From the NCBI RefSeq assembly GCF_006345805.1, contig NC_043009.1:67332001-67396000 (forward strand): a stretch of DNA of 64,000 nucleotides, given 5' to 3'. Origin of the DNA: Octopus sinensis. Its lineage: Eukaryota. A model generated the notes under the pieces. That model was not told the DNA's origin. It did not search any database and saw only the letters and a list, made by a program, of their open reading frames with translations. Both the position numbers and the translations under genes were made by a program. Every line of letters begins with the position of its first letter. Position 1 is the stretch's first letter. Positions 1 to 55,187 of this stretch are shown here, in pieces.

Positions 1-2273
1 TAATATTAAATATATTAAATGACTCAATTTGGCTTATTTTGATCTTAACGATCATTTCATTGATGAGTTAGTATTAGTTATAATTAAAAATAACAAACAA
101 CAGCATCAGTAACAAACATTGCCCAACACATAAAAAAAGGAAAAAAAAATAATAATATCCTCCCCCACTCCCCACATATTTGCTGATTCTTAATTAACAT
201 GAATAAATTATGTGTAAAGAAATCCCACATCAGATCAAAACATTTGTTGTTTGCAACAAATTTTGACAAAAAGTAAAGTTTCTTTTTTTTACTTTACTCT
301 AATCGTAACCAAATTCCAATATTCTTAATCTGTTCGATTCTTTTACCTTATTTCATGAGATACCTATTGAAAACAATGCTTGTGACACACAGACACACAC
401 ACACACAGTATTGAAATTGGAGGAGAAATGAAAACCCACTACATCACTCAAAATACATATATCTGTGTTCTTCTTATCTTTGTCTGTTTACAACAACAAC
501 AACAACAAATAAATTACCTTGCTAATGGCTTTTTTTTTGTTGTTTTTACTTGAAAAAATGATCAAGGTTTGAACAGACAAAAACAAATTTTGCTATAATA
601 CATCAAAAGGAGAAATAAAATTAAATCAATGCTAAACACTAATATATGTATGTATATATATGTACGTATATGTATGTATATATGTGTGTGTATATATGTG
701 TATGTATGTATATGTATGTGTATATATATGTGTATATGTTCATCATATATATATATGTGCATGTATGTATATATATATATATATAGTCATATATTCATTA
801 TAAGTTTGTGACAGCTCCAGGTTTTGGAAAATGGTTCCAAGGTTGACCTACCATTTTGACACGTTATTTAAATAACCATTTCTCTAGAGTTTGTTTCCTC
901 CTGTTCTGGAAATATATCCACTTGGAATTAATTTTCTAAATATTTCTCCTTCTTTAACAATAATAAATAATGCAAATATTTTAAACAAATAATATTAATG
1001 ATACACACATATTCTTTCTTTTATCTTAGTAGAAAGAGATAGAAAAACAGCAGACGTATTTGTTCAATTCAACATATGAAGTTGTTTTTTCAGAGTGTTT
1101 TTTTATATATCTGATGTTTCTTTAATATAAAAAGTGTTCATCTGAAAAGGCCACTTATATCATTAAGAAAATTTAAATGAAATTAATTAAAAAAACAAAA
1201 AAACCTCCAAAAACATCCTCAACTAAAACAAAAACCAAAAAACAATAAAATCTCTCAACAAAACCAAAAAAATAAGAAAAAAGATATTAAACGAATAACA
1301 AGTCTGTTAATTAGATTAATGAAATATCTTAATGAATTTTGTAGTTGACTGGGAATATTTTTATTTTCCCCATTTCCATCTTGGCTTTGACATTTTTTAC
1401 TCTCCGAATTGAAGACTTCTGGTGTGACCCTCTTAAATCCTTTCTCCTTGAATCTAAGTCGGAAAGGCACCAGCGAAACCGATAATTGCAAAAATAAAAA
1501 CAACAAAAAAAAAAACCACCAACAACAACAACCACCCACCAAAAATAAGCAATTGGCACCTGGACACATTTTGTTATTCGATCAGTTGTCTGTTACTGTT
1601 CACATTTATTATATCTTTTTTACAACAGAAAAAAAAAAAAAGCAAAACACACAAACAAAACATTCATCATTCGGATTTCAGCATCAGTTGTTTGTTATTT
1701 ATTTTTATTTATTTATTTATGCTCATTAAATATTTGAAATGTTCTAATTCTGGGCTTTTTGGTTTTTTATTCTTTTTCTCTTTTTTTGTTCTTAATGTGT
1801 TGCTTTTGAATCTCTGTCCCTTGGGGCAGGGACGTCTCATCGCTACTATCGATCACTTTGTAGCCCCTACTGATCATCTCCCATTTCTCTTTCTCCCTGT
1901 CCCTTATTAAAGGTCAGTAGCCCTGTAGATCCTCTGGAAGAACCTGCTTTGCACCCTCCCACCATCCTTTAACCCTTCGTTCCCTAGTATAAAGGTTAAA
2001 TGGTACGGAATAGAGACAACTGCCTTTGTTTTGCAACCAAAGAACAAAGAGAGGAGAGTCCTTGTTAAAAAGTGATGATATGATAGGACATACAGTTCTA
2101 TAACTAAGAGATGAGGAATTATTTACATTTGATGGATATTTGTCCTCATCTTGATTGATTCGATTGATTCTAGTTTCAGCTCATGAGCTGTGGCCATGCT
2201 GGGGCACCGCCATCTTGTTTGTTATTAACACGTTTTGGGTGATATACCCTCCAGCCTTCATCACTACACCATA

Positions 2274-3416: not shown

Positions 3417-4845
3417 CAGTGGGGTGGGGGGTGAATAAATATTCGTACATGTCAAAATTCTTCATTTATTTAATTTCTAATGAACATAAATGGGATATAC
3501 CAATACTATATTTGCATACACATGCATAAACTAAGAATATGCAAAAGAAACTAATAAATTATAGTAACTAATGAATTTATATGCAATCATAAATATTTAG
3601 GGGTGAAAAAAGTATTCGTACAGAATAAATTTGATTTTCTATGCCACCAAATACTGTTAAATACTTCTTTTTTTTTTTTTTACTAGAACTTTCTCATTTG
3701 TTCCAATAATCTTATCAGTTGTCATTTTTAAGTGTCAAAACATTAGCTTCTTCATTCAGCATTGAGACAAGATAAATAGTATTGTAATAATTGCGAAAAG
3801 TAAAGAACTCACAAATTCAGTGAAAATTTTAATTATTGAACAGTGGAAAGCAGGTAAAAGTTACAGGAAAATATCAGAGACCCTTTGTATTCCATTTTCT
3901 ACCATATCTTCATTTATTCAAAGATATAAAGAATCGGGAACTGTTGTAAACAGAATAAGATCCGGTGCACCATGCAAGATTTCTCCTAGATCTTTAAGAA
4001 AAATGAAGTGAAGAATCGAAAAAAAAATGCAATGACCACCAGAAAGGAGTTGCAAGATTTGTTAGCTTCAGAGACTAGTGTTACACTACGAACAATCAGC
4101 AATGAACTTCATAGGAATGAACTGAAGTCACACTCTCCTAGAAAAACTCCGCTGTTGATTAAAGGCATAGAGATGCCATTTAAAATTTGTTTATGAACAT
4201 AAAGATAAATCTGATACATTCTGGGAAAATGTTCTATGGACAGACGAGTCGAAAATTGAATTGTTTGGACGAAATTCGCTTAACCATGTTTGGAGGAAAA
4301 ACACAATTCCTACCGTAAAGTTTGGAGGTGGCAACATCATGGTGTGGGGGTGTTTCTCTGCAAATGGTACTGGCAATTTACATGTGATAGATGGTAGAAT
4401 GAATGCAGAGATGTACCAAAATATTTTGAACAATAATTTATGGGACTTTGTAGAAAAGCTCCAGCTTTGTGAAGGGTGAGTTTTACAACAGGGTAACGAC
4501 CCTAAGCACATGGCGAAGTCTACCAAAAAATGGATTGTCGATCACAACATAAAATTATTACAATGGCCAAGCCAGTCACCTGACTTAAACCCCATTGAAA
4601 ATTTGTGGCGTTATTTGAAAATTAAAATTCATTCAAGAGCCCCAACATGCATTGCAGATTTGAAGAAAATTTGTCAAGAAGAATGGGAAAAAGTTCCTAA
4701 AGAAACATGCGAGTCATTGATTAAGAACTACAAGAAGAGATTGGTTGAAGTGGAACTGAATAATGGTTATGCTACGAAGTATTAAATCAGAATTATCAGT
4801 TATTTATGTTCTGTACGAATACTTTTTTCACCCCTAAATATTTAT
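3417..4845 (+). mobile_element. Tc1/mariner (DD34E-type, IR/DR) transposon relic; transposase pseudogene at about 3790-4785
   Basis: TA|CAGTGGGG left end; [26 protein letters not shown], (D>G)NDPKH, WPSQSPDLNPIENLW; perfect 37-bp inverted match 3589-3625 / 4809-4845; frameshifts and stops. Confidence 0.92.
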
Positions 4846-7390
4846 AATGGTCAGGGATTTAGGGACATCCTAATTGAGAAATTTGATGAGAGGGAGGAGG
4901 AACTACAGACTTGTGACATAGAGGGCAACTGGGAATTCCTGAGGGATAGCTTGCTGAGTGCCACAGACCAAATCTACAGCTGGTGCAAAGTCCCATCCAG
5001 ACCTAGGGTAACGTCGTGGTAGAATGATGCAGTAGACAGGTGCATTAGAGCAAAGAAACAGGCGTAGAAGAGTGGGGGTAGCAGGGAACTCTATCAGATA
5101 GCCAGAAGGGAAACTAGGAGACAAGTATATCTAGCCGAAAAGGGAAGCAGAAAAGAATAAGTTTGCCCATGTTCAGTAATGTGAGGACCAAAGAACTGAA
5201 GTGTTTCAGATTGCAAGTCAGAGTGTGAGAGAAAATCATGATGTCATAGGCAAGATATGTGTCCAGATGGATGATGGTGCACTTGCATTTAATGATTCTT
5301 CAAAGAAAGAGGCTTGGAGATGCCATTATGAAAGACTGCTGAATGTGGAGAATGAATGGGGAGGAGGAGAGTCTGCCAAATGTTGACCCAACTGAGGGAC
5401 CAAATTGACAGTTCCTTGGTAGATAAATTGATTAAGGATATGAAGACAGAGGAAGTCCCCAGCCCATCAGGAATCACTGCTGAGATGCTGAAAATATCCG
5501 GCAGTGTGGGTTATGGTCAAGTCACCTGTATTGTAAATCAGGTGGTTCACGAAGGAGTCATACCTGTTGACTGGTGTCAACTGCTACAAAGATAAAAGTG
5601 ATACCTTAGATAAAAATAATTACAGAGGTAACAAATTGTTGGATCAGGTGATGAAAGTTACAAAAGGTTACAGTCCAACTAATTATAGGGAGAGAGTTAG
5701 CCCAGATGAGATGCAGTTTGGTTTTGTGCCAGGGAGAAGCACCACTGATGCTATATTTCTGGTAAGGCAGGTGCAGGAGGAATACATAGCCAAAGATAAA
5801 CCACGATACTTGCCCTTTGTTGATTAGGAGAAAGACTTTGACAGGGTCCCTTTGATCCCTTATCTGGCAGTCAATGCAGAAACTAGGGATAGGCAAGTGG
5901 TGGGTGAGAGCTGTACAAGCTATGTACAGGGATGCTACCAGTAAGGTGAGGGGTGGCAATGAGTACAGCAAAGAATTCAGGGTACAAGTAGGGGTTCAGC
6001 AAGAATCGATGCTCAGCCCCCTCTTGTTCATCATAGTCTTGTTCAACAGAGGAATTTAAGACAGACTGCCCCTTGGAAGTGCCTCTATACTGATGACCTT
6101 GCTCTTATTGCTGAATCACTACCAGGACTAGAGAAGAAGATCCAGGTATGGAAGGATGGTATAGAATTGAAGGGCCTTAGAGTTAACCAAGCAAAAACCA
6201 AAGTCTTAATAAGTTGGAAGGCAGACAAATCACAAATCCCTTCAGATAGATGGCCCTACTTGATCTGTAGAAAAGGCATAGGTAGAAACTCCATAAGATG
6301 CACCTGATGTAAGCTTTGGACACATAAAAGGTGCAGCAATATCAGAGGAAGGTTAACAAGGAAAATAGCTTTTGTATGTGGAAGATGCACAAGCACAATA
6401 AACGCTGAAAATGTACAGAAAATAGACTCCATCAACTGCCAAGAGGGTAAACTAGAGGTAGTAGATAGCGCTTCCGTTATCTTAGCAGTGGAGGTGGATG
6501 CTCTGAGAGCGTAGCTGTGAATATAAGATTAGGCTTGACAAGAGCTCCCACCCCTGCTGGTAACAAAGGGCTTCTCTCTCAGAGTGAAAGGTAGATTGTA
6601 TGATACCTGTGTATGAACAGTTATGCTACATGGACGTGAAACAAGGGCTGTGACAGCTGAGGACATGTGTAGGCTTGAACGAAATTAAGCCAGTATGCTT
6701 TGCTGGATGTGCAATGTCAGTGTGCATGGTCGACAGAGTGTAAGCATCTTGAGAGAAAAGTTAAGCATAAGAAGCATCAGATGTGGTGTGCAAGAGAGAT
6801 GACTGGTAATGGTCATGTGATGTGTATGGATGAGGAGAGCTATGTAAAGAAGTGCCAATTGCTAAATGTGGAAGGAACTTGTGGTATAGGTAGACCCAGG
6901 AAGATATGGGACAAAGTGGTGAAGCATGATCTTTGAACTTTGAGCCTCACAGAGGCAATGACTCATGACCGAGATCTTTGGCGATGTGCTGTGTTTGAGA
7001 TCTGTCAAGCCAAGTGAAATTGTAGTCATGGCCAATGCTGGTGTCACGTAACTGGTACCTGTGCCGGAAGCACATAAAGAGCACCGTTCGAGCGTAGGGC
7101 CTCACAGAGGCAAAGTGACTGAGTTCCTTTTGAGTGTTGGACCTTATCGAGGCAATGACCGAGACCTTTGGCATTATGTTATGCTTGAGAAGAAGACCCA
7201 TCAAACCAAGCAAAATCGCAGTTGTGGCAGATACTGGTGTCACACAAATGGCACCCGTGTCGGTGGCACGTAAGAGCACTCATTACACTCTCAGAGTGGT
7301 TGGCATTAGGAAGTCCTCCAGCTTACCAGCTCTGGTCAAACCGTCCAACCCATGCCAGTATGGACAACGGATGTTAAATGATGATGATGA
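4846..7390 (+). mobile_element. 5'-truncated, degenerate RTE-clade LINE (RT domain, 3' UTR, (GAT)n tail)
   Basis: Fragments QFGFVPGRSTTDAIF, FVD*EKDFDRVP, WVRAVQAMY, LSPLLFIIV, YTDDLALIAES, GRPRKIW; tail ...ccaacccatgccag...gttaaatgatgatgat. Confidence 0.9.
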
Positions 7391-8995: not shown

Positions 8996-9548
8996 AACAA
9001 GGTGGCAAGCTGGCAGAATCCTTAGAACATCGGACAAATGATCAACACCATTTCTTCCAGCTTCTTACATTCCAAGTTCAAATTCTGGCAAGGCTAACTT
9101 TGCCTTCCCCCATCCTGTTGGGGTCAACAAAATAAGTATCAGCTGAGTGCTTGTGTTGAGGTAATCAACTTCCCCACCCCTCAAAATTGGTGGCCCTGGT
9201 GTCAAGTTTAGAAAGAATTATTAATCAAATGAGAAGCAGATTAGCAGAATCCTTACAGTTCTGTACAAAATGTCTTGCAGTGTTTGTTCTGGCCCTCTAC
9301 ACCCTTACTGAAACCAACCCTGCCCTTTGTCCAGCCAGGGTCAATGAAATAAAACACTTGTCTTGTACTAATGAGGATTTAAATGACTAAAACCAGAAAA
9401 TTTCCGGTCTTTTGTTTGTATTAGAAAATCAGAAAAGAACCATAGAATTTCTTAATCACCATTTTGTTGCTCCCAAAAATTCTTCCAAATTGCAAAAAGT
9501 AAAAATAAAAAAAAAAAATGAAAGAAATGTGAAAAAAATCAAACAAAT

Positions 9549-9918
9549 TTATTTTTTCTTGTGTATTTTCTGTTTTTTATGTTTTACTTCGTGTTTTGAT
9601 TTCTGAGAAGAATGTCTTTTCCTGTGAGATTGTGTTGTGTCTACAGAACCATTCCTGGCATTAGATTCAGGAGAAGAAGAGGGAGACTTTCTGGAGTCTC
9701 TTGGTAAATGTTCAGATTTCCGAGATGAGGAGGCAGGCGAACGATGTCTGCTACGATGATGGCTCGAGTTTGATGTGTGGCGATTCTTATTGCTTGGGAG
9801 GATATTACTTTTGATGACTGCTTCTCTTTGTCTTTGGCGCCGTTTGGAATCGCTGACGATGCTGAGCAGAGTGTTATTGAGGAAGACCTTATTTGCCTGC
9901 GGAATTGGGCATTTGCGC
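9549..9918 (-). CDS. POLR1D: POLR1D-isoform-2-like gene, terminal exon (RKCPIPQANKVFLNNTLLSIV... S/R/H/K-rich tail ...KIHKKK*)
   Basis: tttcag|G CGC AAA TGC; matches human MKCPLASTNKRFLINTI (recalled). TAA at 9551-9549; spliced product 155 aa. This is not the Pol I/III subunit RPAC2. Confidence 0.92.
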
Positions 9919-10443
9919 CTGAAAGTAAAGGGTGAATATAGTTTTGTGTGATGAGAGTAAAATATTTTAGGCTGCAAACTAATTTGTATGGAAGTGAAAT
10001 ATTTATGTAGCTTACATATCTATCTATATATATATACTCTTTTACTCTTTTACTTGTTTCAGTCATTTGACTGCAGCCATGCCGGAGCACCGCCTTTAGT
10101 CGAGCAAATCAACCCCGGGACTTATTCTTTGTAAGCCCAGTACTTATTCTATCGGTCTCTTTTTGCCGAACCGCTAAGTGACAGGGACGTAAACACACCA
10201 GCATCGGTTGTCAAGCAATGCTAGGGGGACAAACACAGACACACAAACATATACACACACATACATATATATATATATACATATATACGACAGGCTTCTT
10301 TCAGTTTCCGTCTACCAAATCCATTCACAAGGCATTGGTCAGCCCGAGGCTATAGCAGAAGACACTTGTCCAAGATGCCACGCAGTGGGACTGAACCCAG
10401 AACTATGTGGTTAGTAAGCAAGCTACTTACCACACAGCCACTA

Positions 10444-10517
<74 letters not shown>

Positions 10518-10537
10518 GACAAAAATAAAGGGTTATA

Positions 10538-11405
10538 CATAAGGGTGGGCTAAAATGTTCCTAGTTTGACTGTGAAGAAGTGATGCTAGAGCTGTGAAAT
10601 CTTGGATGCGTTAATTTCAACTCTTCTTCTTAATAACTGAATTGTTTCTTTTAGGGAAAATAATATCTGACTGTTCAACGAAGACTTCAAAAGTAAGTAG
10701 CAACCTCTGTTGAAAACAGACAAAATTTGGTTATCATGGTGTTATCAAATACCTGCAGAAAAGGGGTTTAGCCCTCAAGAACATTCATGCTAACACGGTT
10801 GCTGCAGTAGGGGATGATGCTCCAACTTTATCAACTGTGCAAAAATGGGCAGCTGAATTTAGGAGAAGGAAGAGAGAGCTTTGAAGATGACCCGAGGTCT
10901 GAACGTCCTGAAATTGCTACACCACATGCTGATAGATGACAGGCAATTAACTATAAATCAAATAACGAATGCTATTAGCATATCCCATGGGAGAGTTGAG
11001 AATATTCTGCACAATGAACTTAGCATGACGAAGGTTTATGCTTGGTGGGTGCCATGTCTTCTAAAACCTGATTAAAAGAGTACCAGGCTGATCACATCAT
11101 GGGAAATCTGACATCGTTTGAGGCAGATCCAGCTGGCCTCAAAGTTTTCTAACCTAGGACGAGTGTTGGTTTCATTACTTTGAGCCAGAGGCAAAGAGAC
11201 AATCCATGCAGTAGCAACACTCCTCACCCGCTCTAAAGAAGATCAAAGTTGTTTGATCTGTAGTGAAGGTGATGGCCTCAGCTTTTTGGGATGCAGGAGG
11301 CTTTGTGTTTATTGACTATCTTCAAAAGGGCCACATCAATCTGCCACTGCTGAGGCAGTTGGAAAAGTCTATCAAGACTAAATGCCCAGAAAAACTGACA
11401 AAAGG
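10538..11405 (+). mobile_element. Mariner (SETMAR-transposase-like) relic
   Basis: TA|cataagggtgggctaaaatgttc end; STVQKWAAEF, EDDPRSERP, WVPCLL, KVMASAFWDAGG; multiple stops. Confidence 0.85.
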
Positions 11406-11779
11406 GGCCACACAGAGTGTACTGGGTGCTTTTTACATGGTACCAGCACTGCTGAGCTTGCCAAGTACCTGCAAAATAAGACTTCCTAACTGAGAAGAAT
11501 AAGAAAGTATGATAGAGAGAGAGGAGGTGTTGTTGTCTTGCTGAAGAGGTGAATGCATGGCTTGCCCACCTGGAAAATGAGAAAGAGAAGAGATGTGAGG
11601 TCCAGGTACAACATGAATATGAGAGAGGTGATTAGAGATACGGAATGAATTGGACACAGAGGATATCAGTTCAATGTCGGGGAAAGTGAAGAAAATAGGG
11701 TAACATAAAAGATTGATGGAAGAGTGGGTGTCAGAAGATGAGTAGCAGGGGGAGGCTTGATAAAGCCTCAATCCTGCTG

Positions 11780-12215
11780 AGATGGGAAAGTCTTCTCAAG
11801 CACAGTATAATACCATTCTTCTCAGTTCCCCGTAATCTCCTCTGAGGTCAGTCTTCACCATTTTGTCCCACATCCTCTTCAATCTACCTCTGCCACATGT
11901 TCCTTCAACATTTAGTCATCAGCATTTCTTTATACAGCTGCCCACATCCATTTGCATCATATAACCATTCCAGATCAGTCTTCGCTCCTGCACACCACAT
12001 CTGATGCCTCTCGTAAGCAACTTTTATATACATTTCTCTGAAGTCTTCTTCGCATGGCCTCTGCATTTACAGCCCAAGTTTCACAGCCATGTAGCATTGC
12101 CATTTGTACACAGACATCATACAACCTGCCTTTCATTCTGAGAAAGAGGCCTTTTGTTATCAATAGAAGTGAAAGTTCACTGAACTTCCTCCAGCCAATT
12201 TTCTACTTTCGGAAC
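11780..12215 (-). mobile_element. RTE LINE RT C-terminal fragment
   Basis: KGRLYDVCVQMAMLHGCETWAV, homologous to about 6590-6950; similar fragments at 17410-17830 and 39040-39440. Confidence 0.8.
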
Positions 12216-12233
12216 ATGCTATGTATGGGTGGG

Positions 12234-12437
12234 AGGTGGTGGTGCTGGAAAGTTCCTGGCTTTGGGAAAAAGAAGTAGAGGAGGATCCGTGAATTAGGAT
12301 TCTATTCAACATATTCCCCTCTCACATTTACAAACTTCAGTTTTTCTAAGCCCTGTAAAAGAACTTGGAAGGTTTGGCCTCCAACCAGGCCTTTCACGAT
12401 ACCCTTAAAGCCAGGAACTTTTCAGCACCCCCTTGTA
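12234..12437. mobile_element. Mariner-derived MITE
   Basis: TIRs ggtgctggaaagttcctggcttt / aaagccaggaacttttcagcacc, ending in TA. Confidence 0.75.
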
Positions 12438-12759
12438 TGTGTGTGTGTGTGTGTGTGTTTGTCTCTCAACACTGTTTGACAACTGGTGTTGGTTTGCTTC
12501 TTGTGTTCCTATAACTTAGCAGTTCAGCAAAAGGGGTTGATGGAATAAGTACCAGATTTTAAAAAGTAAGTCCTGGGGTTGATTCATTTGACTAAATGTT
12601 TCAAGGCAGTGCCCCAGCATGGCCACAGTCTAATGAACAAAACAAGTAAAAAGATAAATGTATCCAATAAATTGGTTGGTAAGACATCGTAATGGTTGAG
12701 TGAATTATTATTTACTCTGGGCCATAAAATAACGTAGGTGCTTTTTGACGTAAAACAAA

Positions 12760-13980
12760 TATGAATACAAGAAAACGTAGTGTGTATACGGAACAAGAGG
12801 ATTCTGAACCAGAAGTTGGCGATCCATCATGAATTGCTTCAACAGTAGGGGCATTGTATGAAGCATTTGGTTTTAAATCGGTATCATCATTACCGGGAAA
12901 AGCTAAATGTGAAAGTACTCAAATGGAAGACTTTGACGAAGCAGCTAAACAGCAACTAGTGACACTAACCAGTACCATATTGCAAAAAGTATGCTCTATC
13001 ATTAGTCTGGATGATGCTGGAGGCCTTATAAAAGAGGTTGTTAAAAACGAAGGAGAAGGTGTCATTGATGAAGGCAAATTAGCAGAAAATATTGCAGATA
13101 GATACAACCTTAAACTTTGTACTTTTGTACACACTGGTGTACAAGATAGTAAAGGCAGTATCGACGCTTATTTTGCCACAGCTATGAGGCATTGTAATAT
13201 GGGTTCAGAGGTTTTAACTCCAGTTGAATTAGTTGATGCTTGAAATGCTAATGGCAGTGTAAGTAATACAGTGGCAGAATTGGTTGGTATTAATAGGCCT
13301 GCTGTTGAACAGTTTGAACAGGAAAACTTGGTGATAATTGGAAAATTACAAAACATAAGTGATCATATGGAAGTACAGTTTGATTTGACAAGAAATTCCG
13401 CTTCAGTTTATATCCCATTCATGAAGCGATCCAGCATAATAATGAGTGTTGTGGATTTGAAACCGGATGGGCAAGAACAAGAAAGCACGGTAATAAGTAT
13501 GGTCGAAAGTATGTGGATCCATTTAAACAAGAGATTATCAATATGTTTAATTTGGGTAATGAAAACGAAGCTATGAAACGAGGTCCAGGTAAAATGTTAG
13601 GGGAACTTAAACGTAAACATCCTGGGCGTTTGGATTTACCATCATCATCATCATCATCATCGTTTAGCCAGAAGGCTTCATCAGGCCCAGTCAAATCGGA
13701 AACAGAAATTCGAACTGTTATTTCATCCTTGATAGCAAAGAAAAGAAAGGGACAATCAACATTGTATGATGCCAGCCGTGGAACCCATGAACCATTCAAG
13801 TCAACAGCGCTGGAAATATTTCAGGAAGATCCTAATATTACACCACGCAGGGCATGGGAATTGTTCCAACAAAGACATCCTCCACACAAGAATATATCCA
13901 CATATCCAACTGACGCAAAGATAAAGAGCAAAATATCTTCTTTAAAGGTTATGTATAGGAAAACAAGTGAAATACCTTAG
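12760..13980 (+). pseudogene. Degenerate long reading frame, probably a DNA-transposon (possibly Sola3-like) transposase relic
   Basis: About 400 codons broken by in-frame TGAs (12828-12830, 13241-13243) and a frameshift near 13440-13510; protein-like motifs SKGSIDAYFATAMRH and GPGKMLGELKRKHPGRLDLP..SETEIR. Family assignment is inference. Confidence 0.45.
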
Positions 13981-14459
13981 GGATTTAAAGAAAGCATTGT
14001 CATTTTTCAAAAAATTGACAATTTCGAGAAAAAGTATTTTCGAAAATAATATAAATATGCGACACAAAATATATAATATTGCAGCTATAATCACGATTTT
14101 ACTGAGTTTTGGTAGTTTGGGTCTTTACAAAACTGGGTCAAACTTCCAAACTCTGAGACGTTAGATTTGCGCTCATAAAAACTTAAACAAGTGGAAGAAT
14201 TATCTCCCTTAGATTTATAAAAATTTTTTTCGTCTTTAAGATAAAGGAAAAGGGTGTGCCCTTATTCTAGTCTTTTTTTAGGGTGAAGGGGAGAGAAATA
14301 AATGGGTGAAACTAATAATTAACGCTCAGTTGGAATTATTAAATATTAGTGCTTACTCATGGTGGATGTATTGAGAGAATCAGCTGAGTAACGGACAAAA
14401 TGCCTTGCAGTAGTTATGGTCCAACATCAAATCCCATCAAATGTTGATTTTGCATTAAT

Positions 14460-15040
14460 CACCATCATCATCATCGATTAACGTCTGCTTTCCATGCTGG
14501 CATGGGTTGGACGGTTTGACTGAAGTCTGGCAAGCCAGAAGGCTGTTCCAGGCTCCAGTCTGATCTGGCAATGTTTCTACAGCTGGACGCCCTTCCTAAC
14601 GCCAACCACTCCAAGAGTGTAGTGGGTGCTTTTTACGTGCCACTGGCACAGGAGCCAGTCAGGCGACACTGGCATTGGCCACGTTTGGATAGTGCTTTTT
14701 ATGTGCCACTGGCACGAGAGCCAGTCAGCGGGCACTGGTCACAGCTACGATTTTGGTTTTACTTGACTCAACAGGTCTTAAGCATATCATATCGCCTGAC
14801 GCATCAAGGGTACTATTAAATGGGCCGAACATGTAAGACTGGCAACTTTAGTTGCCAGGTCTTCTCAATCACAGCATATCTCCAAAGGTCTCGGTCTCAT
14901 GTCATTGCCTCTGTGAGGCCCAACGTTTGAAGGTCATGCTTCACTACCTCATCACATCTTCCTGGGTCTACTTCTTCCACAGGTTCCTTCCACAGTTAGA
15001 GACCCAAGGACCATCAATTCTATGTCCATGGTTCCTGTTG
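14460..15040 (-). mobile_element. RTE 3'-end copy (reverse)
   Basis: (cat)n-cgattaacgtctgctttccatgc start. Same tail at 24600-25045, 26780-27065, 28730-28960, 36900-37165, 37840-38100, 41960-42630 and 51200-51650. Confidence 0.8.
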
Positions 15041-15620
15041 TTTTGTACATCTAAGTAATTTTCTTCAAGAAGAGGAGCATCGTCACCATTCAGCATCATC
15101 CCACAATTATATTTCCGTTGACCAGCAAATCTTGCCTCATTAATTACAATAGAGTTGTTGTCTGTTCTAGCCATCTTACCCTGTTGACGATGAGAAGCGA
15201 TGGTTCCACACACCTCTCTGCACATAGACCAGGCATTTACCATACTGGAAGACTTTCTGGTTAGAGTCACTGCTTTATTCATGGGTATCTCCATTACAAC
15301 AAAGAACACCAGAACACTAAGATCTTGCACAAACTCAAATTGCAGTGCAACTTGTTGTTGATGCCTGTGTAATAAAAAAAAAAAAATGGTAACCTTTCCG
15401 AACGCCAAGTTTGACACCCATTTTGAGGATAGTGAAATCTAGGCCAGTATTCTCCACTTCTGTTAGATTTTCATTTTTCTTGCCTGACGCCTACCACATC
15501 AATGACAAGGCTTTGCTTCTTGTGATGTATCCAGAAGATGGTTTTCTAGTAAAAATGCAACTACTGTTTCCTCTGTAAAAATTACACGTCTATAGAAATC
15601 CTTCAACAGCAATGTCATGG
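14990..15620 (-). mobile_element. Merlin / IS1595 (ISXO2)-like DDE transposase relic
   Basis: EETVVAFLLENHLL..CH*CG; AWSMCREVC; VINEARFAGQRKYNCG; HRIDGPWV. Confidence 0.7.
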
Positions 15621-17880
15621 TTAAAATGAACTCAGGTTAAGAAAAGGTAGACCGCATGCTAAAAGTAATTTCACAGCATAGACAGGATACTGCAATGGAC
15701 TGCACACTAAAGTAGCACAAAATGCTTATTTTTGTATATTTCCATTTTATATTTGAAAAGTTTTCTTAGTTTTTGTTTTTTAATTGCAAAGTCTTTGATC
15801 AGATCCTCAAAATTAATCTATAATTAGTAGAGAGATAAGATAGCCTAATTATTATTTTAGCAAGTTTAAGAGGATTCTTTTGTGCCATAAACCAGTTATT
15901 GCACTGCACTCACTGCACTTGCATTTAATTTTGATAATTATTTTGTAAAAAAAAAAAAAAAAAAGAAATTCTTTAGATATGGCACCAATTTAAGAAACCA
16001 CTGCTAAAACTATTTCTCTTCTCCAAGAACATGTAAGTTTTCTTACATCTTGTAAGGAGTTACCATATTCTCCTCAGTGCAGTGAACTGGCAGAAATGTT
16101 TTCTAGCACCAGGTTAAATAAGGTAAAGCAAGCAAATGAGGAAACCTCTACTGGCCACCTAGTCTGTTAGATATAGCAGCTAAATTCTCTCAAGTAATAC
16201 TTTATTGTCTAAAACAAAAGGAGGAACACAAGAGATAATGTAGTCCTAGATAAACGAAAACGATGGAATGGTGAGATCAACTAAATGAGCTGTTCTGAAA
16301 CCAACAAAAACCAGCCTCGCCATCCATATAACGGAAAAAATTTTGAAATTATTCCGCACCCTCAGTGTCTTCATTAATAAAAAGACGAAATAGTCCTTCA
16401 TTAAGGCGTTGCAACATGGCAACCCATCCGTCCCCTTTTCGTTCCTCATATCCTCCATAAGGAAGCTTGCCTCTTCTCCTATTGTGAAAACCACCAAACA
16501 CCTGCCATGAGTTCGATAAGTAAATTAAAAAGTAACCTTGGTAACCTAAGAGAAATCAATGATAGCGTCGAGTTATTCATTTAAAGGGAGATAACCTATA
16601 AAATTGAATCTGCCACGATGACGTTAATTGAATTGACCTGGCCAGCCAAGACACCGCCCCATCCCGCCACCACATTGTTCTACATTTTTTTGGTTTGCAT
16701 AAATGAAGTCGGAGTAATTATTTACGGAGCTGTGTGTTCTTCTTATACTCTCTCTTGAATTAAGAGTACGACTGTATTTTATTCAGAAGCCAGTATGGCT
16801 CTGTGCTTAAAGAATTTGTTTCCCCAACTACAGGGTTCCTGGTTCAGTCCTCACTATGCGGAACCATGGGCAATGGTCCCTTTCTATAGCGCTGGACTGA
16901 CCAATGCCTTGTGAGAAAATCTGATTGGCAGAAACTGCAGAACCCTGTCGCATGTTTGTGCGTGTGTGTGTGTGTAGGAGTGGCTGTGTGGTAAGAAGGT
17001 TGCTTCCCAACCACATGGTTCTGGGTTCAGTCCCACTGCGTGGCATCTTGGGCAAGTGACTTCTACTATAGCCTCGGGCCGACCAAAGCCTTGCGAGTGG
17101 ATTTGGTAGACAGAAACTGAAAGAAGCCCATCTTATGTGTGTGTGTGTGCGCGCATGTATGTGTTTGTACCCCCACCATTGCTTGACAACCAATGTTGGT
17201 GTGCTTACGTCCCCGTAACTTAGCGGTTCAGCAAAAGAGAGCGATAGAATAAGTACTAGGCTTACAAAGAATAGGTTCTGGGGCCGATTTGTTCGACTAA
17301 AGGTAGTGCTCCAGCATGGCCACAGTCAGATGACTGAAACAAGTAGAAGAATAAAAGAATACATACATACGTATATATACATGTATGTATATATATTCAA
17401 GGGCACTTAGCAGAGTGTAATGGGAGTCTTTTACATGTCATCAGCAATATTCTAAAGTCAAGTTTCACTATTTCTTCCATGGTCTTTCTCTTCTATTTTT
17501 CTTTGAATCATTTGCCACTTCTTCACCCAACTTGCATCCTTCATACACATCACATGACCATACCATTGCAGTCTTCTCTCTTGCACACTGCAACTGATTT
17601 GTCTTGTGCCATTTTTTGTTCACATATGCTAACATAACACACACAGGGGTTCATGCTCACCTAATTTCTTTGCAACCTTTGTGCATATTTGCTGCCCTCA
17701 GTGTCCGTGTTTTGCTACCACGAAAAATCTCATTATTCTTGTATACAAATCAAGGCCATTTCTTGCTGTGTTGGAATATTTCAAACTGTTCACAAACACT
17801 AGTTTTTGTCATGTAATGTTTGGACCTATCAACCTCAGTTCTTTGTTTTTTGTTTTAAAAAATGGTGAAGCCAAACTTAC

Positions 17881-17955
17881 CATCCTATTGCTCCCATTTC
17901 TTTAGCCCTCTCGGAACCTCTTTTAGCTTCTTGGAGAAGTTCAGCAACAGCTAAC
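17881..17955 (-). CDS. POLR1D: POLR1D-isoform-2-like gene, exon 2 (LAVAELLQEAKRGSERAKEMGAIGW)
   Basis: gtcag|G...TG|gtaagt, 75 nt, phase 2/2. Matches the human isoform 2 segment KAIEELLKEAKRGKTRAETMGPMGW (recalled from memory). Confidence 0.92.
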
Positions 17956-19436
17956 CTGACAATTAAAACATACGAAAAGTTAGATACAGTGTGAGCATTC
18001 TGAGATTTGGTGCTAAATAAATTAGAGATTTAAAAACCAAAACGACAAGAAATGGGATTCAAGATATAACATTGGTTGCAAAATATATAGAATTGATTGA
18101 AGAACGTTTGTTGTAATGCTGGGTTATTAATCATTTGGTATAAATTCAAGCCTTACAAACCTCCCAGACATGGTCCTCACACACGGGGACAGTCACCTCA
18201 GCATAAGGCTATGAGGTCAGCTATGTAAAACCTATATAAAGGTCTATATAATATAAACGTATATAAAGCTCTAAAAGACGTTTAATTCATTAAGGGCACA
18301 ATTTGCAGAGATTATTTTACAAAAGAAAATGGGCAATGATTATCAATAGAAATGGAAATTAGTCAAAAGATGTAGACATTCCGTCAATTACACTGTGCAG
18401 CAGGAAATATTGGTATCTGTCATTAAAAGTTGTTAAGGAAGCTAACTGTTGGACAATACAGCGAGTGATTGTAAAGTAAAATTGGCACTTCAACAGCCAA
18501 GCACACTCGTGAGCATCTTTTAATGCCTTATTGTGAGATATCAATGGTAACAGCGACTGAGGATGACTTTAGATAGTCACTCTACCTGATAGATACAACA
18601 GCAAAATGTTCTTTAAATTACATTATTGTATCACAAAAAAGAATTCCACAGAATGTATTCCAAGGTACCGAATACTCAAAAAAGATTGGAAAGCTGTTGA
18701 TCATAGGTATACTCGACCAGGGCTGAACTAGGGTTAAGCAACAACGATGTTAGTATCACCTCCATGACAAGAATCAGACGTTTAACACGCATTAATCTAA
18801 CCCATAAGAGCAGCCAGCTCTACAAAATAACCAAACATTCTGTTTTCTGCTCAAGCAGAGCACGATAGATTTGCTTTTAAAAGGTAGAACGTGTCAGCTG
18901 GGTTCTTCTAAAGCAACACAGTAACATAGTCAAGGTGAATGAAAAACGGTTTTGCTTTTTATTATCATGTTAGGAAAACAACAAGTGGAAATTAAACACA
19001 TTGGATATGAAATGAAGAGGTTTTTGTTTGCTTTACTTCTGTAGAATGGTTACACAAGAAAATGGAGGAAATATAATATATTGCGCCGTAAAACCTCGAA
19101 AAGTTCGAAACTCTTAAGTCTAAGCCATAATTAAACTACAAAAGGAAGACAGTCACGCAATATTACTATAAACCAAGAAAGCTTTAATAACGAAGGACAA
19201 CCCAAAACAACGAAACCCCAAAATGTAAAATATTCAGACAAGAAATGTCTAACAGGTACTCGCTGCCTAATTTTTTTCAAGTGATGGGAACTGAAATTCC
19301 GGACCCGAGGAAAATTTTCTAAATTCTTCCCAGACGCAAATTTTGACATCTCGATCCAGGACATGTCGGTACTAGTCCTGGAAACTACGAACGAATGATA
19401 ACGGTTTAATTACGGATATTTATAAAGTCCACTTAC

Positions 19437-19459
19437 GCATCAAGATCCTCCTCCGCCAT
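19437..19459 (-). CDS. POLR1D: POLR1D-isoform-2-like gene, coding exon 1 (MAEEDLDA)
   Basis: Minus strand aacatcATGGCGGAGGAGGATCTTGATGC|gtaagt in a locally CpG-rich patch; phase 2. Confidence 0.85.
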
Positions 19460-20857
19460 GATGTTACGGCCAGGCGGTGACGCAGGAAAATACGTCCCCT
19501 CCGAAAAGAAACCCCGATTGTTATAGTGCTTTCATCATTTTAAAGCCTTTCCTTTGGTATTTCAGCTTTGTATGTTATGCTTCTTGCAAGAGAAGTGATT
19601 TCAACGGAAAAGTAAAGTTTGTCTTTCTATCAGAGATACTTTACTCTTGTTGTTTAACCCCAGGTCAAACAAAAGATATTGCAACCATCTCTGCTACTTT
19701 TTCTACATTTTCGCAACCATAAAGAAGCAGGGAAACATATATATAGAACCACATTATCTAATATGTTTTTCCTTTTTTAAAGAAACCTGGCAGAATATTC
19801 TAGAATATTCGGATCTTTTCACTTTCACGAGCAGATTTTTAAAATAATTTCTTTGTAACTAAACACTTTTAAACTTCGTATACTGGTAGAATGTGTTACA
19901 TAAAACATCTTTTTCTCTTGGCTTTCTTGAGAAAATTCTGTAGTTTGTAAGCTATTTGTTGTTTAATTTCTTGCATTTCGGCAATTTCAACCAATCAATG
20001 ACGTCTATTGAGGTGAATACAATTTCTGCGGTTCTTTGTCAGCAACAATTATTTGCGGTGTCATATCAGTTTATTATGGCTAAAGAAAGAAATAGCAAAA
20101 AATATTTGAAAATTGGGGTGGGGGTGAAATTTCCGAAGATTCCACCTCACCCCGTTTTCCAGACCCAAAAAGGGGTTTTGTAGTATATTAGGTCACTGGA
20201 ATTCAATCAACGAAAAAAAAAATTTCCAATGATTCCGGGAAATGGCGGGGGAGAGGGGTCCGGTTTCCCACACACCCCTTTTTTCCCCGAACAAAAATAA
20301 GGGGTTTGCAGCATATTATGAGGTCAGGGTACTTGATTCCATGCAAAAAAAAAGAGATTGTTCTTTTTTTTTGTTTAGTAAAAATCGTGCTGGGAAAAAA
20401 GATCAATGGGGGGGGGGTTAAATTTCCGAGGCTTCCCCCTCAACCCACATAGTTTTCCAGAACTAAAAATGGATTTTGTAACATATTATGCGGTCACCGG
20501 AATTCATTGAACAAAAAAAAAAAAAATTCCAATGATTCCGGAATATGGGGTCTGCCGCCCCTCGTTTTTTTTACCGAACAAAAACTGAGTTTGCAGCATA
20601 TTAGGAGGTCAGGGTACTTGGTTCCAAGCTAAAAATCCGAGTTTTTTTGGGTTTTTTTTCTTAGTGAAAATCGTGCGGGTGAGAGGATCAAAATTTACCC
20701 ATTTTTATTTCTTAGGGTGTGGCATAACATAAAGAGGACGGTCAGCTGACAAAATCACAGAAACGTCGATGTGTATTTCAGCATTTTGTGCTCTGAATTC
20801 AAATGTTGTCGAGTTCATTCTTCCGTACTTGATTAAATAAAGTACTTGTCGAGACTG

Positions 20858-20896
<39 letters not shown>

Positions 20897-21604
20897 CGTT
20901 TTTTCACACTGTATATAAGAAGCGAGTTTGTACCCTAAATGTCCCTTGTCTGTGCTTGTAATGTCCCCTCTGTGTAAACCTTTTATAGGTTAATAAAGAA
21001 ATATCTCTTTCTCTCTAAAGCAAAGTCTTCAGTGTGAGTGTGTGGTTTTGGGGGTCGACCGCATCCTCCGCTTCATTTTGTGTTAATCACTCATTCTCAT
21101 TTAATTGTATATATTTTAATTGTTTGTTCATTCATACGTTTCGTCTCATTCGATACCCTGACCCCCAACGTTTGTTTTGTCTGTCCCCGTATCGTCCCCT
21201 CTTTTTCTCAACCTTATGCTGAATAAAGAAATTCTCTCTCTCTATCAGAATTGAATGCATTTCTCTGGGAAAAGGACCTTAAGAACCATATGGAAGAGTG
21301 TGATTGCCGGGGCTTTAGCAGAGTCTGGCGTATGAGGATATTATCTGATTGCTGACACAATTTCGCCGCTTTTCTTTTGTGTTAGTAACGTCTGATCTTC
21401 TCTTATCGTTTGAACTTTGACATAATTTACAGGGGATTTATTTAAACAGGGCAACAAAACACCGCCGACACCGGTTTGTGATTAGCTTAAACAAATATCG
21501 ATGTTTACATCGAGGAGTTGAGAGATCCTAAAGCACCGACCGTTGGCTCTGATCTGGGACAGGACACCAACAGCAAGTGCTTCCGACGGTTTGACCATAT
21601 CAAG
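19460..21604. promoter_or_regulatory. Putative bidirectional promoter/5' region between the divergent POLR1D-iso2-like and ILVBL genes
   Basis: Divergent ATGs 2.1 kb apart; CpG-enriched patches at about 19380-19520 and 21460-21600. Confidence 0.55.
19810..20075 (+). repeat. Dispersed repeat family beginning GGATCTTTT
   Basis: Near-identical reverse copies at about 57960-58252 and 60010-60215; class not determinable. Confidence 0.7.
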
Positions 21605-23929: not shown

Positions 23930-26900
23930 TCTCTTCCCTCTCTCTCCCTCTATCTCTCTCCTCTTCTTTTTTTTATTTATCTCTGTTCACTATGTAAAGA
24001 AAATCAAAACACTTGGTTCAAATAGTCTCAATATAAATAATATATAAAGGGCTTCCACAAATAGACTTAACCCTTTCGTTACTGTATTTATTTTGAGATG
24101 CTTTGTATTTCCTTCAATTACTTTGAAATATAACGAAGAATTTAGTGAAAATAACTTAATTAACATTAAGCTGGTGTTAGAAATATGAATTGTGACTAAG
24201 GTTTGGTGGCAGATTTCAATTCAGAACTTATGAAAGCAAGAGAATTGTACTACAGAGCCAGAAGAGGTTTCAGCCAGGTTGGTATTGAAAGGGTAAGGGC
24301 AGCGAGCTGGCAGAAATCTTAGCATGCCGGGCAAGATGCTTAGTGGTATTTCGTCTGCCGTTATGTTTTGAGTTCAAATTCCGCCAAGGTCGACTTTGCC
24401 TTTCATCCTTTCGGGGTCGATTAAATAAGTACCAGTTATGCACTGGGGATTGATGTAATCGACTTAATCCTAAAGTCTGTCCTTGTTTGTCCCCTCTGTG
24501 TTTATCCCCTTGTGGGTAGTAAAGAAATAGGTATTGAAAGGGTAAATCTTTTTCTCTTTCACTCAACATTGTTTATATCCTTGTGTTGGCATGAGTTAAA
24601 CAGCTGGACAGGATCCGGTGAGTCAGAGCACATGTCATGCTCCAACATCTGCTTTGGCATGATTTTGTATGGCTGGATGCTGGTGGCACGTAGAAAGCAC
24701 CATTCGAGCATGATCATTGCCAGCGTCACCTTACTGGCACATGAAAAAACAACATTCGAGTGTGGTCATTGCCAGTGCTGCTGGACTGGTTCCCGTGCAT
24801 GCAGCACATGAAAAATACCTTTTGAGCATGGTCGTTGCCAGAACCACCTGACTGGCCCTTGTACCGGTGGCACGTAAAAAGCACCCACTACACTCTCGGA
24901 GTGGTTGGCACTAGGAAGGGCATCCAGCTGTAGAAACATTGCCAGATCAGATTGGAGCCTGGTGCAGCCACTGGCTATCCAGACCTCAGTCAAACCGTCC
25001 AACCCATGCCAGCATGGAAAGTGGACATTTAACAATGATGATAGTGTATGTTTTTTGCAGAATTCTTGATGTTAAAATGTGTAACTTTCAGTACATAACT
25101 CCTTAACTGAGACAGTTTACTATTGAGTAAGGTGACTTTATGTCAGGTGATGAGAGGTTAATTTCTGACGGAGAGACAAAAACCGGTATCGTGCAGTCGA
25201 GGAAATATATGGGTACCCCTGCTAGAAAAGGTGGGAAGATGGTGAGGAGGTGTCAGGGCATACCCTCAAGTTACAGGAAGGGGGTCATAAGAGATGTGGT
25301 TCATAGGATTGGACAGGGTGATTGGGTCAGTAAGTTATTAAGAGTGTGAAAGGTGAGTACCACTTGGATTGAGATGGGGTTAGAGGTGAATGTCGTGGAT
25401 GCTGGACATGAGTGGAGATGTGGTCAACGGTGAATTCCAGTATGGAGGGAGAAAGGTGGAGGAAATAAGATTGAGTCAGACAGGTGGCAGCACTGGTGGT
25501 GTGGAGAGTGTGTGAGAGGTGCATAGGAGATGGTTAGAGATGATACTTAGAATGTGAAAGACAAAATAAGTGGTTACAGGGAGGGTGAGTGGGAGCCCTA
25601 AAAAGATGAGGGGTGAAATATGTTCAGTTCCACTCTTGTATAATTACAGCAGCTGAATGAATAGTGCCATAGACAGAAGAGTGATGGAGTGATGGGTGTT
25701 ATGTAAATGAGTTGTTGGGAAGAAATACTTCGGAGAGAGATTGGGTGCAAGGGTATAGACATAAAAGGCGGCGAGCTGGCAGAAACGTTAGCACGCCGAG
25801 CGAAATGCTTAGCGGTATTTCGTCTGCCGCTACGTTCTGAGTTCAAATTCCGCCGAGGTCGACTTTGCCTTTCATCCTTTCGGGGTCGATAAATTAAGTA
25901 CCAGTTACGCACTGGGGTCGATGTAATCGACTTAATACCTATGTCTGTCCTTGTTTGTCCCCTCTGTGTTTAGCCCCTTGTGGGTAATAAAGAAAGAAAT
26001 AGGTATAGACATAACCAGATTTGTTTGTTTGTATGTGTGTATTAATGATTGAATGAGTTCGTACGTTTTGAAAAAAATTTTCTCCACTCAATGTTTTCAT
26101 ATTCCAGGTTGATTCCAAGATAAAAAAAAATGGTGGAGATTTAGTGGCAGAAACTCTAAAGGTAAGTCATTATGACATATGTTTTAATTCATTTTGATAT
26201 CAGCTGACCTGAGACTGCTTCAGGTGCGATGAAGCAAAACTACTTGTTTTGGAGTTTTCAGTCCAATTAAAACATTCAATTAAGTTGTTATATTAGAACC
26301 TTTCCTCTGTTGTTATGTTCCAAACCCCAATTTATATTGTGATTAAAAGGGTAAGACCCCCACCCTTCGGTCATGAATGACCTTGGGGTTTCATCTAGAA
26401 AGTTCCCCTCCAAGGCTCAAGTCCGGGCAAGGTTGTTTTTGAAAGACCAGCAGTCTCCTATGCATACCAGCCTCTCATCTCCACACCATCATATGTACAT
26501 CGGGTAAAGGGTAAAGATCCCCTTCATTCATGAACGACCATAGGATTGCACCTAGAAAGTTCCCCTCTAAGGCACAAGTCCGGGCAAGGTTGTTTATGGA
26601 AGACCGGAAGTCTCCTATGCATACCAACCTCCCCTCTTCACGCCACCAATGTTATCCAAGGGAAAGGCAAAGGGGCCGATACAGCTTGGCACCAGTGATG
26701 TCGCAACTCCTTTCTACAGCTGAGTTAACTGGAGTAACGGGAAATAAAGTGTCTTGCTCAAGAACACAACTAACAGCCCAGCTGTAGAAACAAGAGTGGT
26801 GAGCATTAGGAAGGGCATCCAGCTGTAGAAACAAGAGTGGTGAGCATTAGGAAGGGCATCCAGCTGTAGAAACAAGAGTGGTGAGCATTAGGAAGGGCAT

Positions 26901-55155: not shown

Positions 55156-55187
<32 letters not shown>

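What the first reader, a model, noticed from the sequence alone, without database searches (positions are those of the whole stretch)
9549..19459. 'POLR1D isoform 2' protein encoded as an apparently stand-alone gene, without the RPAC2 exon
Seen in sequence: three exons (23+75+370 nt, phases 2/2) give a 155-aa protein whose N-terminal ~55 aa match human POLR1D isoform 2 (recalled sequence), followed by an S/R/H/K-rich tail. Established knowledge: in human, one first exon splices either to the RPAC2 (Pol I/III subunit) exon or to these unrelated isoform 2 exons. Here I find no RPAC2/RPB11-like motif (EDHTLGN, FCGY..HP) in intron 1 (17956-19436) or elsewhere in the window. Inference: 'isoform 2' may be an ancient independent gene of unknown, possibly nuclear or RNA-related, function, and the vertebrate arrangement a derived nesting of RPAC2 in its first intron.
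Basis: partly seen in the sequence, partly recalled or inferred. Interest (0 to 1): 0.75.

Follow-up and report, generated by a model that had tools for sequence, protein, structure and literature searches.

The report
Octopus 'protein POLR1D' gene, ancestral stand-alone form
This is a real three-exon octopus gene for a small conserved animal protein of unknown function, and it lacks the RNA-polymerase subunit (RPAC2) exon because only placental mammals were found to have that exon inserted into this gene, so the octopus arrangement is the ordinary one.

Summary
Exons 19459-19437, 17955-17881 and 9918-9549 (minus strand, GT..AG introns, phases 2/2) encode 155 aa. The product is 99% identical to an Octopus vulgaris protein carrying Pfam PF28113 'POLR1D'. 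It is 54% identical to cat 'isoform 2' over residues 3-50.

No RPAC2 coding potential exists anywhere in the window, or 0.5 kb beyond its left edge in O. vulgaris. The same probes find single RPAC2 exons in platypus and bowfin at E 1e-7 to 1e-18.

The family runs from a sponge to mammals and is already named 'protein POLR1D-like' as separate genes.

Among 120 vertebrate RPAC2 proteins, only placental mammals carry the shared exon-1 peptide. In bowfin the two genes lie on different chromosomes. Platypus RPAC2 has five coding exons. Mouse RPAC2 residues 9-133 sit in one exon 0.85 kb inside intron 1 of the PF28113 gene, which suggests a retrocopy.

The octopus locus is therefore the ancestral state and already catalogued. 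Function is still unknown. The model shows a confident two-helix hairpin followed by a disordered basic tail (pI 12). I could not locate the octopus RPAC2 gene itself.

The parts
19437..19459 (-). Coding exon 1: ATG plus 23 nt (MAEEDLD + 2 nt), donor GTAAGT, phase 2
   Evidence: The intron position and phase match mouse exon 1 (26 nt, phase 2), given the one-residue offset in the alignment.
17956..19436 (-). Intron 1 (1481 nt). This is the place where placental mammals carry the RPAC2 exon; here it is empty.
   Evidence: No RPAC2 hit by tblastn, regex or HMM. It is 93.8% identical to O. vulgaris, the lowest value among the blocks of this locus compared.
17881..17955 (-). Coding exon 2 (75 nt): LAVAELLQEAKRGSERAKEMGAIGW, the first helix of the conserved domain
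   Evidence: The same exon ending in GW is found in scallop (L009 11572-11649) and bowfin (L006 13741-13818).
9919..17880 (-). Intron 2 (7962 nt), with repeat copies and unexplained antisense ORFs
   Evidence: It is 98.7% identical to O. vulgaris over most of its length.
9549..9918 (-). Coding exon 3 (370 nt): the loop (KCPIPQANKVFL), the second helix, the basic Ser-rich disordered tail, and the stop codon TAA at 9551-9549
9548..9553 (-). AATAAA polyadenylation-signal-like hexamer overlapping the stop codon
   Evidence: This is a consensus match only; its use is not shown.
19460..21604 (.). About 2.1 kb between the two start codons, shared with the divergently oriented TPP-enzyme gene; likely holds the 5'UTR and a bidirectional promoter (inferred)
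   Evidence: Gene order in O. vulgaris locus L001. The first coding exon of the neighbour is read.

Best explanation
The region is the octopus orthologue of the gene that NCBI calls 'protein POLR1D' (human POLR1D isoform 2, Pfam PF28113). It is a three-coding-exon, stand-alone gene transcribed from the minus strand, head-to-head with a thiamine-pyrophosphate enzyme gene. It has nothing to do with the polymerase subunit RPAC2, and the stand-alone arrangement is the ancestral animal state. Among the vertebrates sampled, only placental mammals have an intronless RPAC2 copy, most likely a retrocopy of a five-exon parent gene. That copy sits 0.85 kb inside intron 1 of this gene and captured its first exon, which created the two-product 'POLR1D' locus. 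For the protein itself, shown: an acidic N-terminal domain of about 70 aa, predicted with high confidence as two long helices (3-33 and 43-72). The helices are joined by the near-invariant G..GW.KCP...NK.FL loop and followed by a disordered, very basic (pI 12), Ser/Arg/Lys/His-rich tail with NLS-like clusters. Inferred: it is a small nuclear, possibly nucleolar or speckle, adaptor. The hairpin would dock on a conserved partner, and the phosphorylatable basic tail would give nuclear targeting and non-specific RNA or chromatin binding.
For: Gene model: canonical splice sites and an open frame. A contiguous cDNA-like contig from another cephalopod joins the same three exons. There are 4 synonymous and 1 non-synonymous differences from O. 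vulgaris. Family: the O. vulgaris protein is 99% identical and carries PF28113. The representative search finds 192 proteins at E<=1e-3, and none of the 151 sequences read (150 listed plus P0002) carries an RPAC2 motif. Named members include 'protein POLR1D-like' in scallop, locusts, damselfly and sponge, 'protein POLR1D' in bowfin and lamprey, and unnamed proteins in tick, mosquito, tardigrade and amphioxus. The consensus L.RLA.EELL.EAKRG..RA...G..GW.KCPL..TNKRFL.NTL has G29 invariant and W33, N42, K43, F45 and L46 at >=90%. Stand-alone state: no RPAC2 in the window, in O. vulgaris L001, in clam L002, in scallop L009 or in bowfin L006, with positive controls. Bowfin PF28113 gene is on CM071089.1 and bowfin RPAC2 on CM071096.1. 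Derived nesting: only placental RPAC2 starts with [10 protein letters not shown]+ISGLKTS before the ancestral Met. Mus pahari exon 1 is shared and RPAC2 residues 9-133 lie in one exon at L003 10872-11249. Platypus RPAC2 has 5 coding exons and bowfin RPAC2 at least 4. Protein architecture: AlphaFold2 pLDDT is mostly above 90 for residues 1-70 and about 50 for the tail; composition is.
Against: The octopus RPAC2 gene was not located, so exon-1 sharing with distant exons is excluded only by inference. The direct Pfam test on the window protein failed because the local Pfam copy lacks PF28113; the family assignment rests on the precomputed hit of a 99%-identical protein and on phmmer. The functional part has no experimental or structural support: there is no PDB fold match, no PDB sequence match, no extra domains in longer members and no paper on the protein in the library. 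A marsupial RPAC2 is also intronless but lies at a locus with no PF28113 exon within 10 kb, so the timing and number of retrocopy events are unresolved.
Confidence: 0.85

Rival explanations
1. The octopus locus is a two-product gene after all. RPAC2 exons would lie more than 10 kb downstream, beyond the left edge of the window, and would be spliced to exon 1 by skipping exons 2-3 and their poly(A) site.
For: The octopus RPAC2 gene was not found here.
Against: In the one lineage found to share exon 1, the RPAC2 exon lies inside intron 1, 0.85 kb from exon 1, and octopus intron 1 is empty. All sampled non-placental RPAC2 proteins have their own start. The 9.5 kb downstream in the window, plus 0.5 kb more in O. 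vulgaris, hold no RPAC2, and no gene is called there in O. vulgaris. The clam and scallop loci also lack RPAC2 within 10 kb.
Confidence: 0.04
2. The ORF is a mis-modelled or decaying gene (pseudogene or chance ORF) rather than a functional gene.
For: The last exon is low-complexity, and the 97-99% identity to O. vulgaris gives little power to see selection.
Against: The conserved domain spans all three exons, with intron positions and phases shared with scallop, bowfin and mouse. A spliced transcript exists in another cephalopod. The domain scores E 1e-14 to 1e-17 against clam and amphioxus proteins. The only amino-acid change against O. vulgaris is in the tail.
Confidence: 0.02
3. Same gene, different mechanism. 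The helical hairpin would be a regulatory docking module for a conserved enzyme such as a kinase or phosphatase. The Ser-rich tail would be a substrate or regulator rather than an RNA- or chromatin-binding nuclear targeting region, and the protein need not be nuclear.
For: The invariant residues cluster in the loop and at the start of helix 2 (G29, G32, W33, N42, K43, F45, L46), like a short linear docking surface. The tail is Ser-rich with SP sites.
Against: No recognised docking consensus was identified. Tails with pI 12 and K/R clusters (KRRQR, KKQK, KKK) are typical of nuclear or nucleolar proteins (general knowledge, not tested here).
Confidence: 0.2

Closest known systems
Human 'Protein POLR1D, isoform 2' (UniProt P0DPB5; NCBI 'protein POLR1D') and its mammalian orthologues (e.g. 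cat P0048)
   Same: The same N-terminal domain: 54% identity over residues 3-50, E 4e-17. The same position and phase of intron 1. A basic disordered tail.
   Different: In placental mammals exon 1 is also spliced to an RPAC2 exon nested in intron 1. Octopus has no such exon. The tails are not alignable.
Invertebrate and non-mammalian 'protein POLR1D-like' genes (Pfam PF28113): scallop Ylistrum XP_060080919.1, Schistocerca, Ischnura, sponge Corticium, bowfin, lamprey
   Same: A stand-alone gene. Three coding exons with the same junctions where checked, in scallop and bowfin. The same motif set. No RPAC2 within 10 kb.
   Different: Only the lineage-specific tail sequence and length differ. In the octopus the gene is paired head-to-head with a TPP-enzyme gene.
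RPAC2 / POLR1D isoform 1 / yeast Rpc19 (Pfam PF13656, PF01193)
   Same: Only the gene name, and in placental mammals the first 8-10 codons.
   Different: There is no sequence or fold relationship. The octopus protein has no RBP11-like dimerisation domain, and none of the 151 family sequences read has the EDHTLGN motif.

Membership tests
Pfam PF28113 'POLR1D' (protein POLR1D / POLR1D isoform 2 family) | Significant match to the family model | tested here: met
   The precomputed PF28113 hit is on the 99%-identical O. vulgaris protein P0001. phmmer with residues 1-69 finds 192 representative proteins at E<=1e-3. Caveat: the local Pfam copy lacks this model, so the direct hmmscan gave 0 families.
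Pfam PF28113 'POLR1D' (protein POLR1D / POLR1D isoform 2 family) | Conserved motif L.RLA.EELL.EAKRG..RA...G..GW.KCP...NK.FL.NT | tested here: met
   In the alignment of 117 members, G29 is invariant, and A10, R24, G32, W33, N42, K43, F45 and L46 are conserved at >=90%. All are present in the octopus protein.
Pfam PF28113 'POLR1D' (protein POLR1D / POLR1D isoform 2 family) | Shared gene structure: a short first coding exon with a phase-2 intron, and a second exon ending in the GW codon | tested here: met
   Octopus; scallop L009 and bowfin L006 exon 2; mouse exon 1 of 26 nt, phase 2.
RPAC2 / RBP11-like RNA polymerase subunit (PF13656, PF01193) | RBP11-like dimerisation domain with the EDHTLGN and FCGY..HP motifs | tested here: not met
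   Absent from the protein and from all six frames of the window. Positive controls score 1e-7 to 1e-18.
Placental-type two-product POLR1D locus (exon 1 shared by RPAC2 and the PF28113 protein) | An RPAC2 coding exon inside intron 1 | tested here: not met
   Intron 1 (17956-19436) has no RPAC2 coding potential. Compare Mus pahari L003 10872-11249.
Placental-type two-product POLR1D locus (exon 1 shared by RPAC2 and the PF28113 protein) | Transcripts that splice the exon-1 donor to RPAC2 exons | not testable with these tools
   No octopus RNA-seq junction data and no similarity search of eukaryote genomes were available. The only transcript-like contig (L005, another cephalopod) joins exon 1 to exon 2 of the PF28113 gene.
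Classical SR / SR-related splicing proteins | An RRM plus an RS-dipeptide-rich domain | tested here: not met
   There is no Pfam domain, and only 2 RS and 3 SR dipeptides. The tail is basic and Ser-rich but is not an RS domain.

The most novel reading that the evidence does not exclude
The mammalian POLR1D gene would be a chimera. An ancient, pan-metazoan gene of unknown function (PF28113, represented here in its ancestral form) was invaded in the placental lineage by an RPAC2 retrocopy. The retrocopy replaced the five-exon parental gene and took over the host's promoter and first exon. If so, 'isoform 2' is the original owner of the locus. Lesions of the POLR1D promoter or exon 1, and whole-gene deletions, would then hit two unrelated proteins. 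I found no paper stating this in the library searched, which does not show that it is unpublished.
Probability: 0.7. Interest if true: 0.45.

Novelty: already known. Interest (0 to 1): 0.28.

Why it matters
For this window it matters little. The gene is an ordinary, already catalogued member of a conserved family in its normal arrangement.

Three wider points follow.

1. The name 'POLR1D(-like)' misleads. These proteins are not polymerase subunits, yet some records already call them RPAC2 or 'Polymerase (RNA) I polypeptide D', for example the alligator and elephant-shark entries. The octopus annotation should therefore not be read as a Pol I/III subunit.

2. A small protein conserved from sponges to humans still has no known function, solved structure or dedicated literature. 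It is a clean target for a localisation and knockout study.

3. The comparison indicates that the mammalian shared-exon arrangement is a recent retrocopy capture. This is relevant when interpreting human POLR1D variants that affect exon 1, the promoter or the whole gene.

Tried and rejected
- Local Pfam scan of the octopus protein, its N-terminus and human isoform 2: 0 families, because the copy lacks PF28113.
- Word-indexed homologue search with the octopus protein: only 3 hits. It missed clear relatives later found by the exhaustive search.
- RPAC2 homologue search to find the octopus RPAC2: only the best 120 of 599 hits are listed, and all are vertebrates.
- The third allowed homologue search was not used. 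No query could be designed that ranks a cephalopod RPAC2 above the roughly 600 vertebrate clusters. A family search would have added nothing beyond.
- Look-up of bowfin isoform X2: not on record, because only the longest product is kept. It was solved with isoform X1.
The 99%-identical P0001 was used instead.
- Foldseek against the PDB, and PDB sequence searches with the family profile and with human isoform 2: no matches.
- Pfam on ten longer family members, looking for informative domain fusions: none.
- Rfam and tRNA scans of the window, looking for intronic snoRNAs and similar: none.
- Literature searches (POLR1D with isoform 2, retrogene, retrocopy, eutherian, P0DPB5, POLR1D-like, Treacher Collins with exon 1): nothing on the nature or origin of isoform 2.
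- An RVxF-type PP1-docking reading of 'NKVFL/NKRFL' was considered and rejected by inspection, because the residues do not fit the consensus.
Full report
**1. The observation**

On the minus strand, ATG at 19459 opens a 23-nt coding exon that ends at a GTAAGT donor. A 75-nt exon (17955-17881) follows a TGTCAG acceptor and ends at GTAAGT. A 370-nt exon (9918-9549) follows TTTCAG and ends in TAA.

An AATAAA hexamer overlaps the stop codon. The window has 38.6% G+C.

It is about 97% identical at the DNA level to Octopus vulgaris chromosome OX597826.1, 79.22-79.25 Mb. It therefore comes from a very close Octopus relative.

**2. Identity of the gene**

The protein is 99% identical to an O. vulgaris protein that UniRef calls 'Protein POLR1D' and that carries Pfam PF28113 'POLR1D'. 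The local Pfam copy does not contain that model. I therefore relied on an exhaustive phmmer search with residues 1-69. It returned 192 representative proteins at E<=1e-3 and 26 at E<=1e-10.

Named members of the family include:
- 'protein POLR1D-like' in a scallop, locusts, a damselfly and the sponge Corticium candelabrum;
- 'protein POLR1D isoform X1-3' in bowfin and lamprey;
- uncharacterised proteins in ticks, mosquitoes, a tardigrade, amphioxus, elephant shark and birds.

Against the cat orthologue of human isoform 2, the octopus protein is 54% identical over residues 3-50, E 4e-17. An alignment of 117 members gives the consensus L.RLA.EELL.EAKRG..RA...G..GW.KCPL..TNKRFL.NTL. G29 is invariant, and A10, R24, G32, W33, N42, K43, F45 and L46 are conserved at >=90%.

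The gene structure is conserved too. Exon 2 begins at (R)LA and ends in the GW codon in scallop and bowfin. Mouse exon 1 is 26 nt, phase 2. With the one-residue offset of the alignment, that is the same intron position as in octopus.

A cDNA-like contig from another cephalopod (SRR8281684) carries the three exons already joined. Between the window and O. vulgaris the CDS differs at 5 sites: 4 synonymous and 1 in the tail. The gene model is sound.

**3. Absence of RPAC2**

My recalled human RPAC2 sequence is identical to PDB chain 7a6h_K, and the yeast and S. pombe sequences were checked in the same search. Three methods found nothing in the window:
- tblastn with these three probes gives nothing at E<=1, and at E<=100 only noise;
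- a regex for the EDHTLGN and FCGY..HP motifs in six frames finds nothing;
- a profile HMM built from 15 RPAC2 sequences scores at best E 9.9 on 3346 six-frame fragments.

The same is true of the O. vulgaris locus, which reaches about 0.5 kb beyond the window's left edge. It is also true of the clam, scallop and bowfin PF28113 loci with 10-kb flanks.

As positive controls, the yeast and S. pombe probes find individual RPAC2 exons in the platypus and bowfin loci at E 1e-7 to 1e-14. The HMM finds them at 1e-10 to 1e-18. The negative result is therefore robust.

**4. Where the shared-exon arrangement exists**

The RPAC2 search listed 120 vertebrate proteins, and their N-termini are decisive. All placental mammals sampled begin [31 protein letters not shown]. 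The sample includes primates, rodents, bats, cetaceans, elephant and golden mole. All the others begin directly at the equivalent of that internal Met (MAE..ERK..LEMVQ) and are about 114 aa long. They comprise a marsupial, platypus, birds, reptiles, amphibians, lungfish, sharks, chimaera and ray-finned fishes.

In Mus pahari, the RPAC2 gene and the PF28113 gene start at the same base. RPAC2 residues 9-133 lie in a single exon 0.85 kb downstream (L003 10872-11249). The PF28113 gene runs on for more than 10 kb.

In bowfin, the PF28113 gene is on CM071089.1 and RPAC2 is on CM071096.1 of the same assembly. RPAC2 has five coding exons over 12.4 kb in platypus and at least four over 6.8 kb in bowfin. 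In both it lies next to a 7tm_1 receptor gene.

An intronless RPAC2 block that still contains its ancestral start codon, preceded by seven codons with no counterpart outside placental mammals, is what a retrocopy would look like. Such a copy would have landed in intron 1 and been spliced to the host's first exon. That reading is inferred, not shown.

A marsupial RPAC2 is also intronless. It has its own ATG and no PF28113 exon within 10 kb. The number and timing of retrocopy events therefore remain open.

**5. Consequence for the finding**

The nesting, however, is a feature of placental mammals among the vertebrates sampled, not of vertebrates in general. A stand-alone gene is what every other sampled animal has.

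I could not retrieve the octopus RPAC2. The protein search lists only the best 120 hits, which vertebrates fill, and no tool searches eukaryote genomes by similarity.

Four indirect arguments make exon sharing in octopus unlikely, and I put it at about 4%:
- intron 1 is empty, and intron 1 is where placental mammals carry the RPAC2 exon;
- the 10 kb downstream contain no RPAC2 and no called gene;
- non-placental RPAC2 proteins have their own start;
- the cephalopod transcript joins exon 1 to exon 2.

**6. What the protein may do**

AlphaFold2 with the family alignment gives two long helices (3-33 and 43-72) joined by the conserved loop. pLDDT is mostly above 90 over residues 1-70, and the rest is disordered with pLDDT around 50.

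The N-terminal 56 residues are acidic (pI 5.0). The tail has pI 12.0, is 63% S/R/K/H, and carries KRRQR, KKQK and KKK clusters and SP sites.

There is no fold match in the PDB, no sequence match to any solved chain, no additional domain in longer family members and no dedicated paper in the library.

My best guess, at about 40% confidence, is a small nuclear adaptor. The hairpin would be a protein-docking module, and the basic, phosphorylatable tail would provide nuclear or nucleolar targeting and non-specific nucleic-acid binding. This is inference from architecture only.

**7. Verdict**

This is a real, correctly modelled gene, and it really lacks RPAC2. It is an ordinary member of an already catalogued family (PF28113, 'protein POLR1D-like') in its ancestral arrangement.

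Three side results are worth keeping:
- the family name is misleading;
- a sponge-to-human protein remains uncharacterised;
- the mammalian two-product POLR1D locus appears to result from retrocopy capture in the placental lineage.

Noticed in passing
window ~21605-47390, + strand: A multi-exon gene for a thiamine-pyrophosphate enzyme, oriented head-to-head with the POLR1D-like gene. Its product in O. vulgaris is 590 aa with TPP_enzyme_N/M/C domains. From its hydrophobic N-terminus it looks ILVBL/HACL2-like, which is my inference. The two start codons are about 2.1 kb apart.
   Followed up: partly
L003 (Mus pahari) 10001-11249; L010 (platypus); L004 (bowfin); L007 (marsupial): Placental RPAC2 is encoded by one exon nested in intron 1 of the PF28113 gene. 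Platypus RPAC2 has 5 coding exons and bowfin RPAC2 at least 4, both at a separate locus next to a 7tm_1 receptor gene. This suggests retrocopy replacement of the parental gene. The marsupial copy is also intronless but is not next to PF28113 exons.
   Followed up: partly
proteins P0045 (alligator) and P0033 (elephant shark): These PF28113-type proteins are named 'DNA-directed RNA polymerases I and III subunit RPAC2' or 'Polymerase (RNA) I polypeptide D' in public records, although they have no RPAC2 domain. This is likely annotation carried over from the shared mammalian gene name.
   Followed up: no
window 4510-4782 (+), with neighbouring fragments at ~4090-4740 and ~5400-5700 (+): A degenerate Tc1/mariner-type transposase remnant (Pfam DDE_3, E 1.3e-9) lies downstream of the gene. 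A weak tblastn chance hit nearby reads like a reverse-transcriptase fragment; that was not tested.
   Followed up: partly
window 12854-13980 (+), inside intron 2, antisense to the gene: Three adjacent ORFs of 101-155 aa in different frames have no Pfam match. They could be a frameshifted relic of an unknown mobile element or gene. The region is 98.7% identical to O. vulgaris, like the rest of the intron.
   Followed up: partly
window ~14460-14660, 24850-25040, 28730-28960, 36900-37160, 42370-42630, 51200-51480 and others: Many copies, 83-91% identical, of a short interspersed repeat of about 200-280 bp showed up as secondary matches when the O. vulgaris locus was aligned to the window.
   Followed up: no
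L005 (Logan SRR8281684 contig, another cephalopod) 3-674 (-) and 1157-1696 (+): The cDNA-like contig joins the POLR1D-like mRNA head-to-head with the start of a protein that reads like GatB (my reading, not tested), not the TPP enzyme. This is either a transcript-assembly chimera or a different neighbour in that species.
   Followed up: no
window 54840-55570 (+): A long ORF of 216-243 aa that is only the translation of a CT-rich simple repeat ([10 protein letters not shown]... units). It is not a gene.
   Followed up: no
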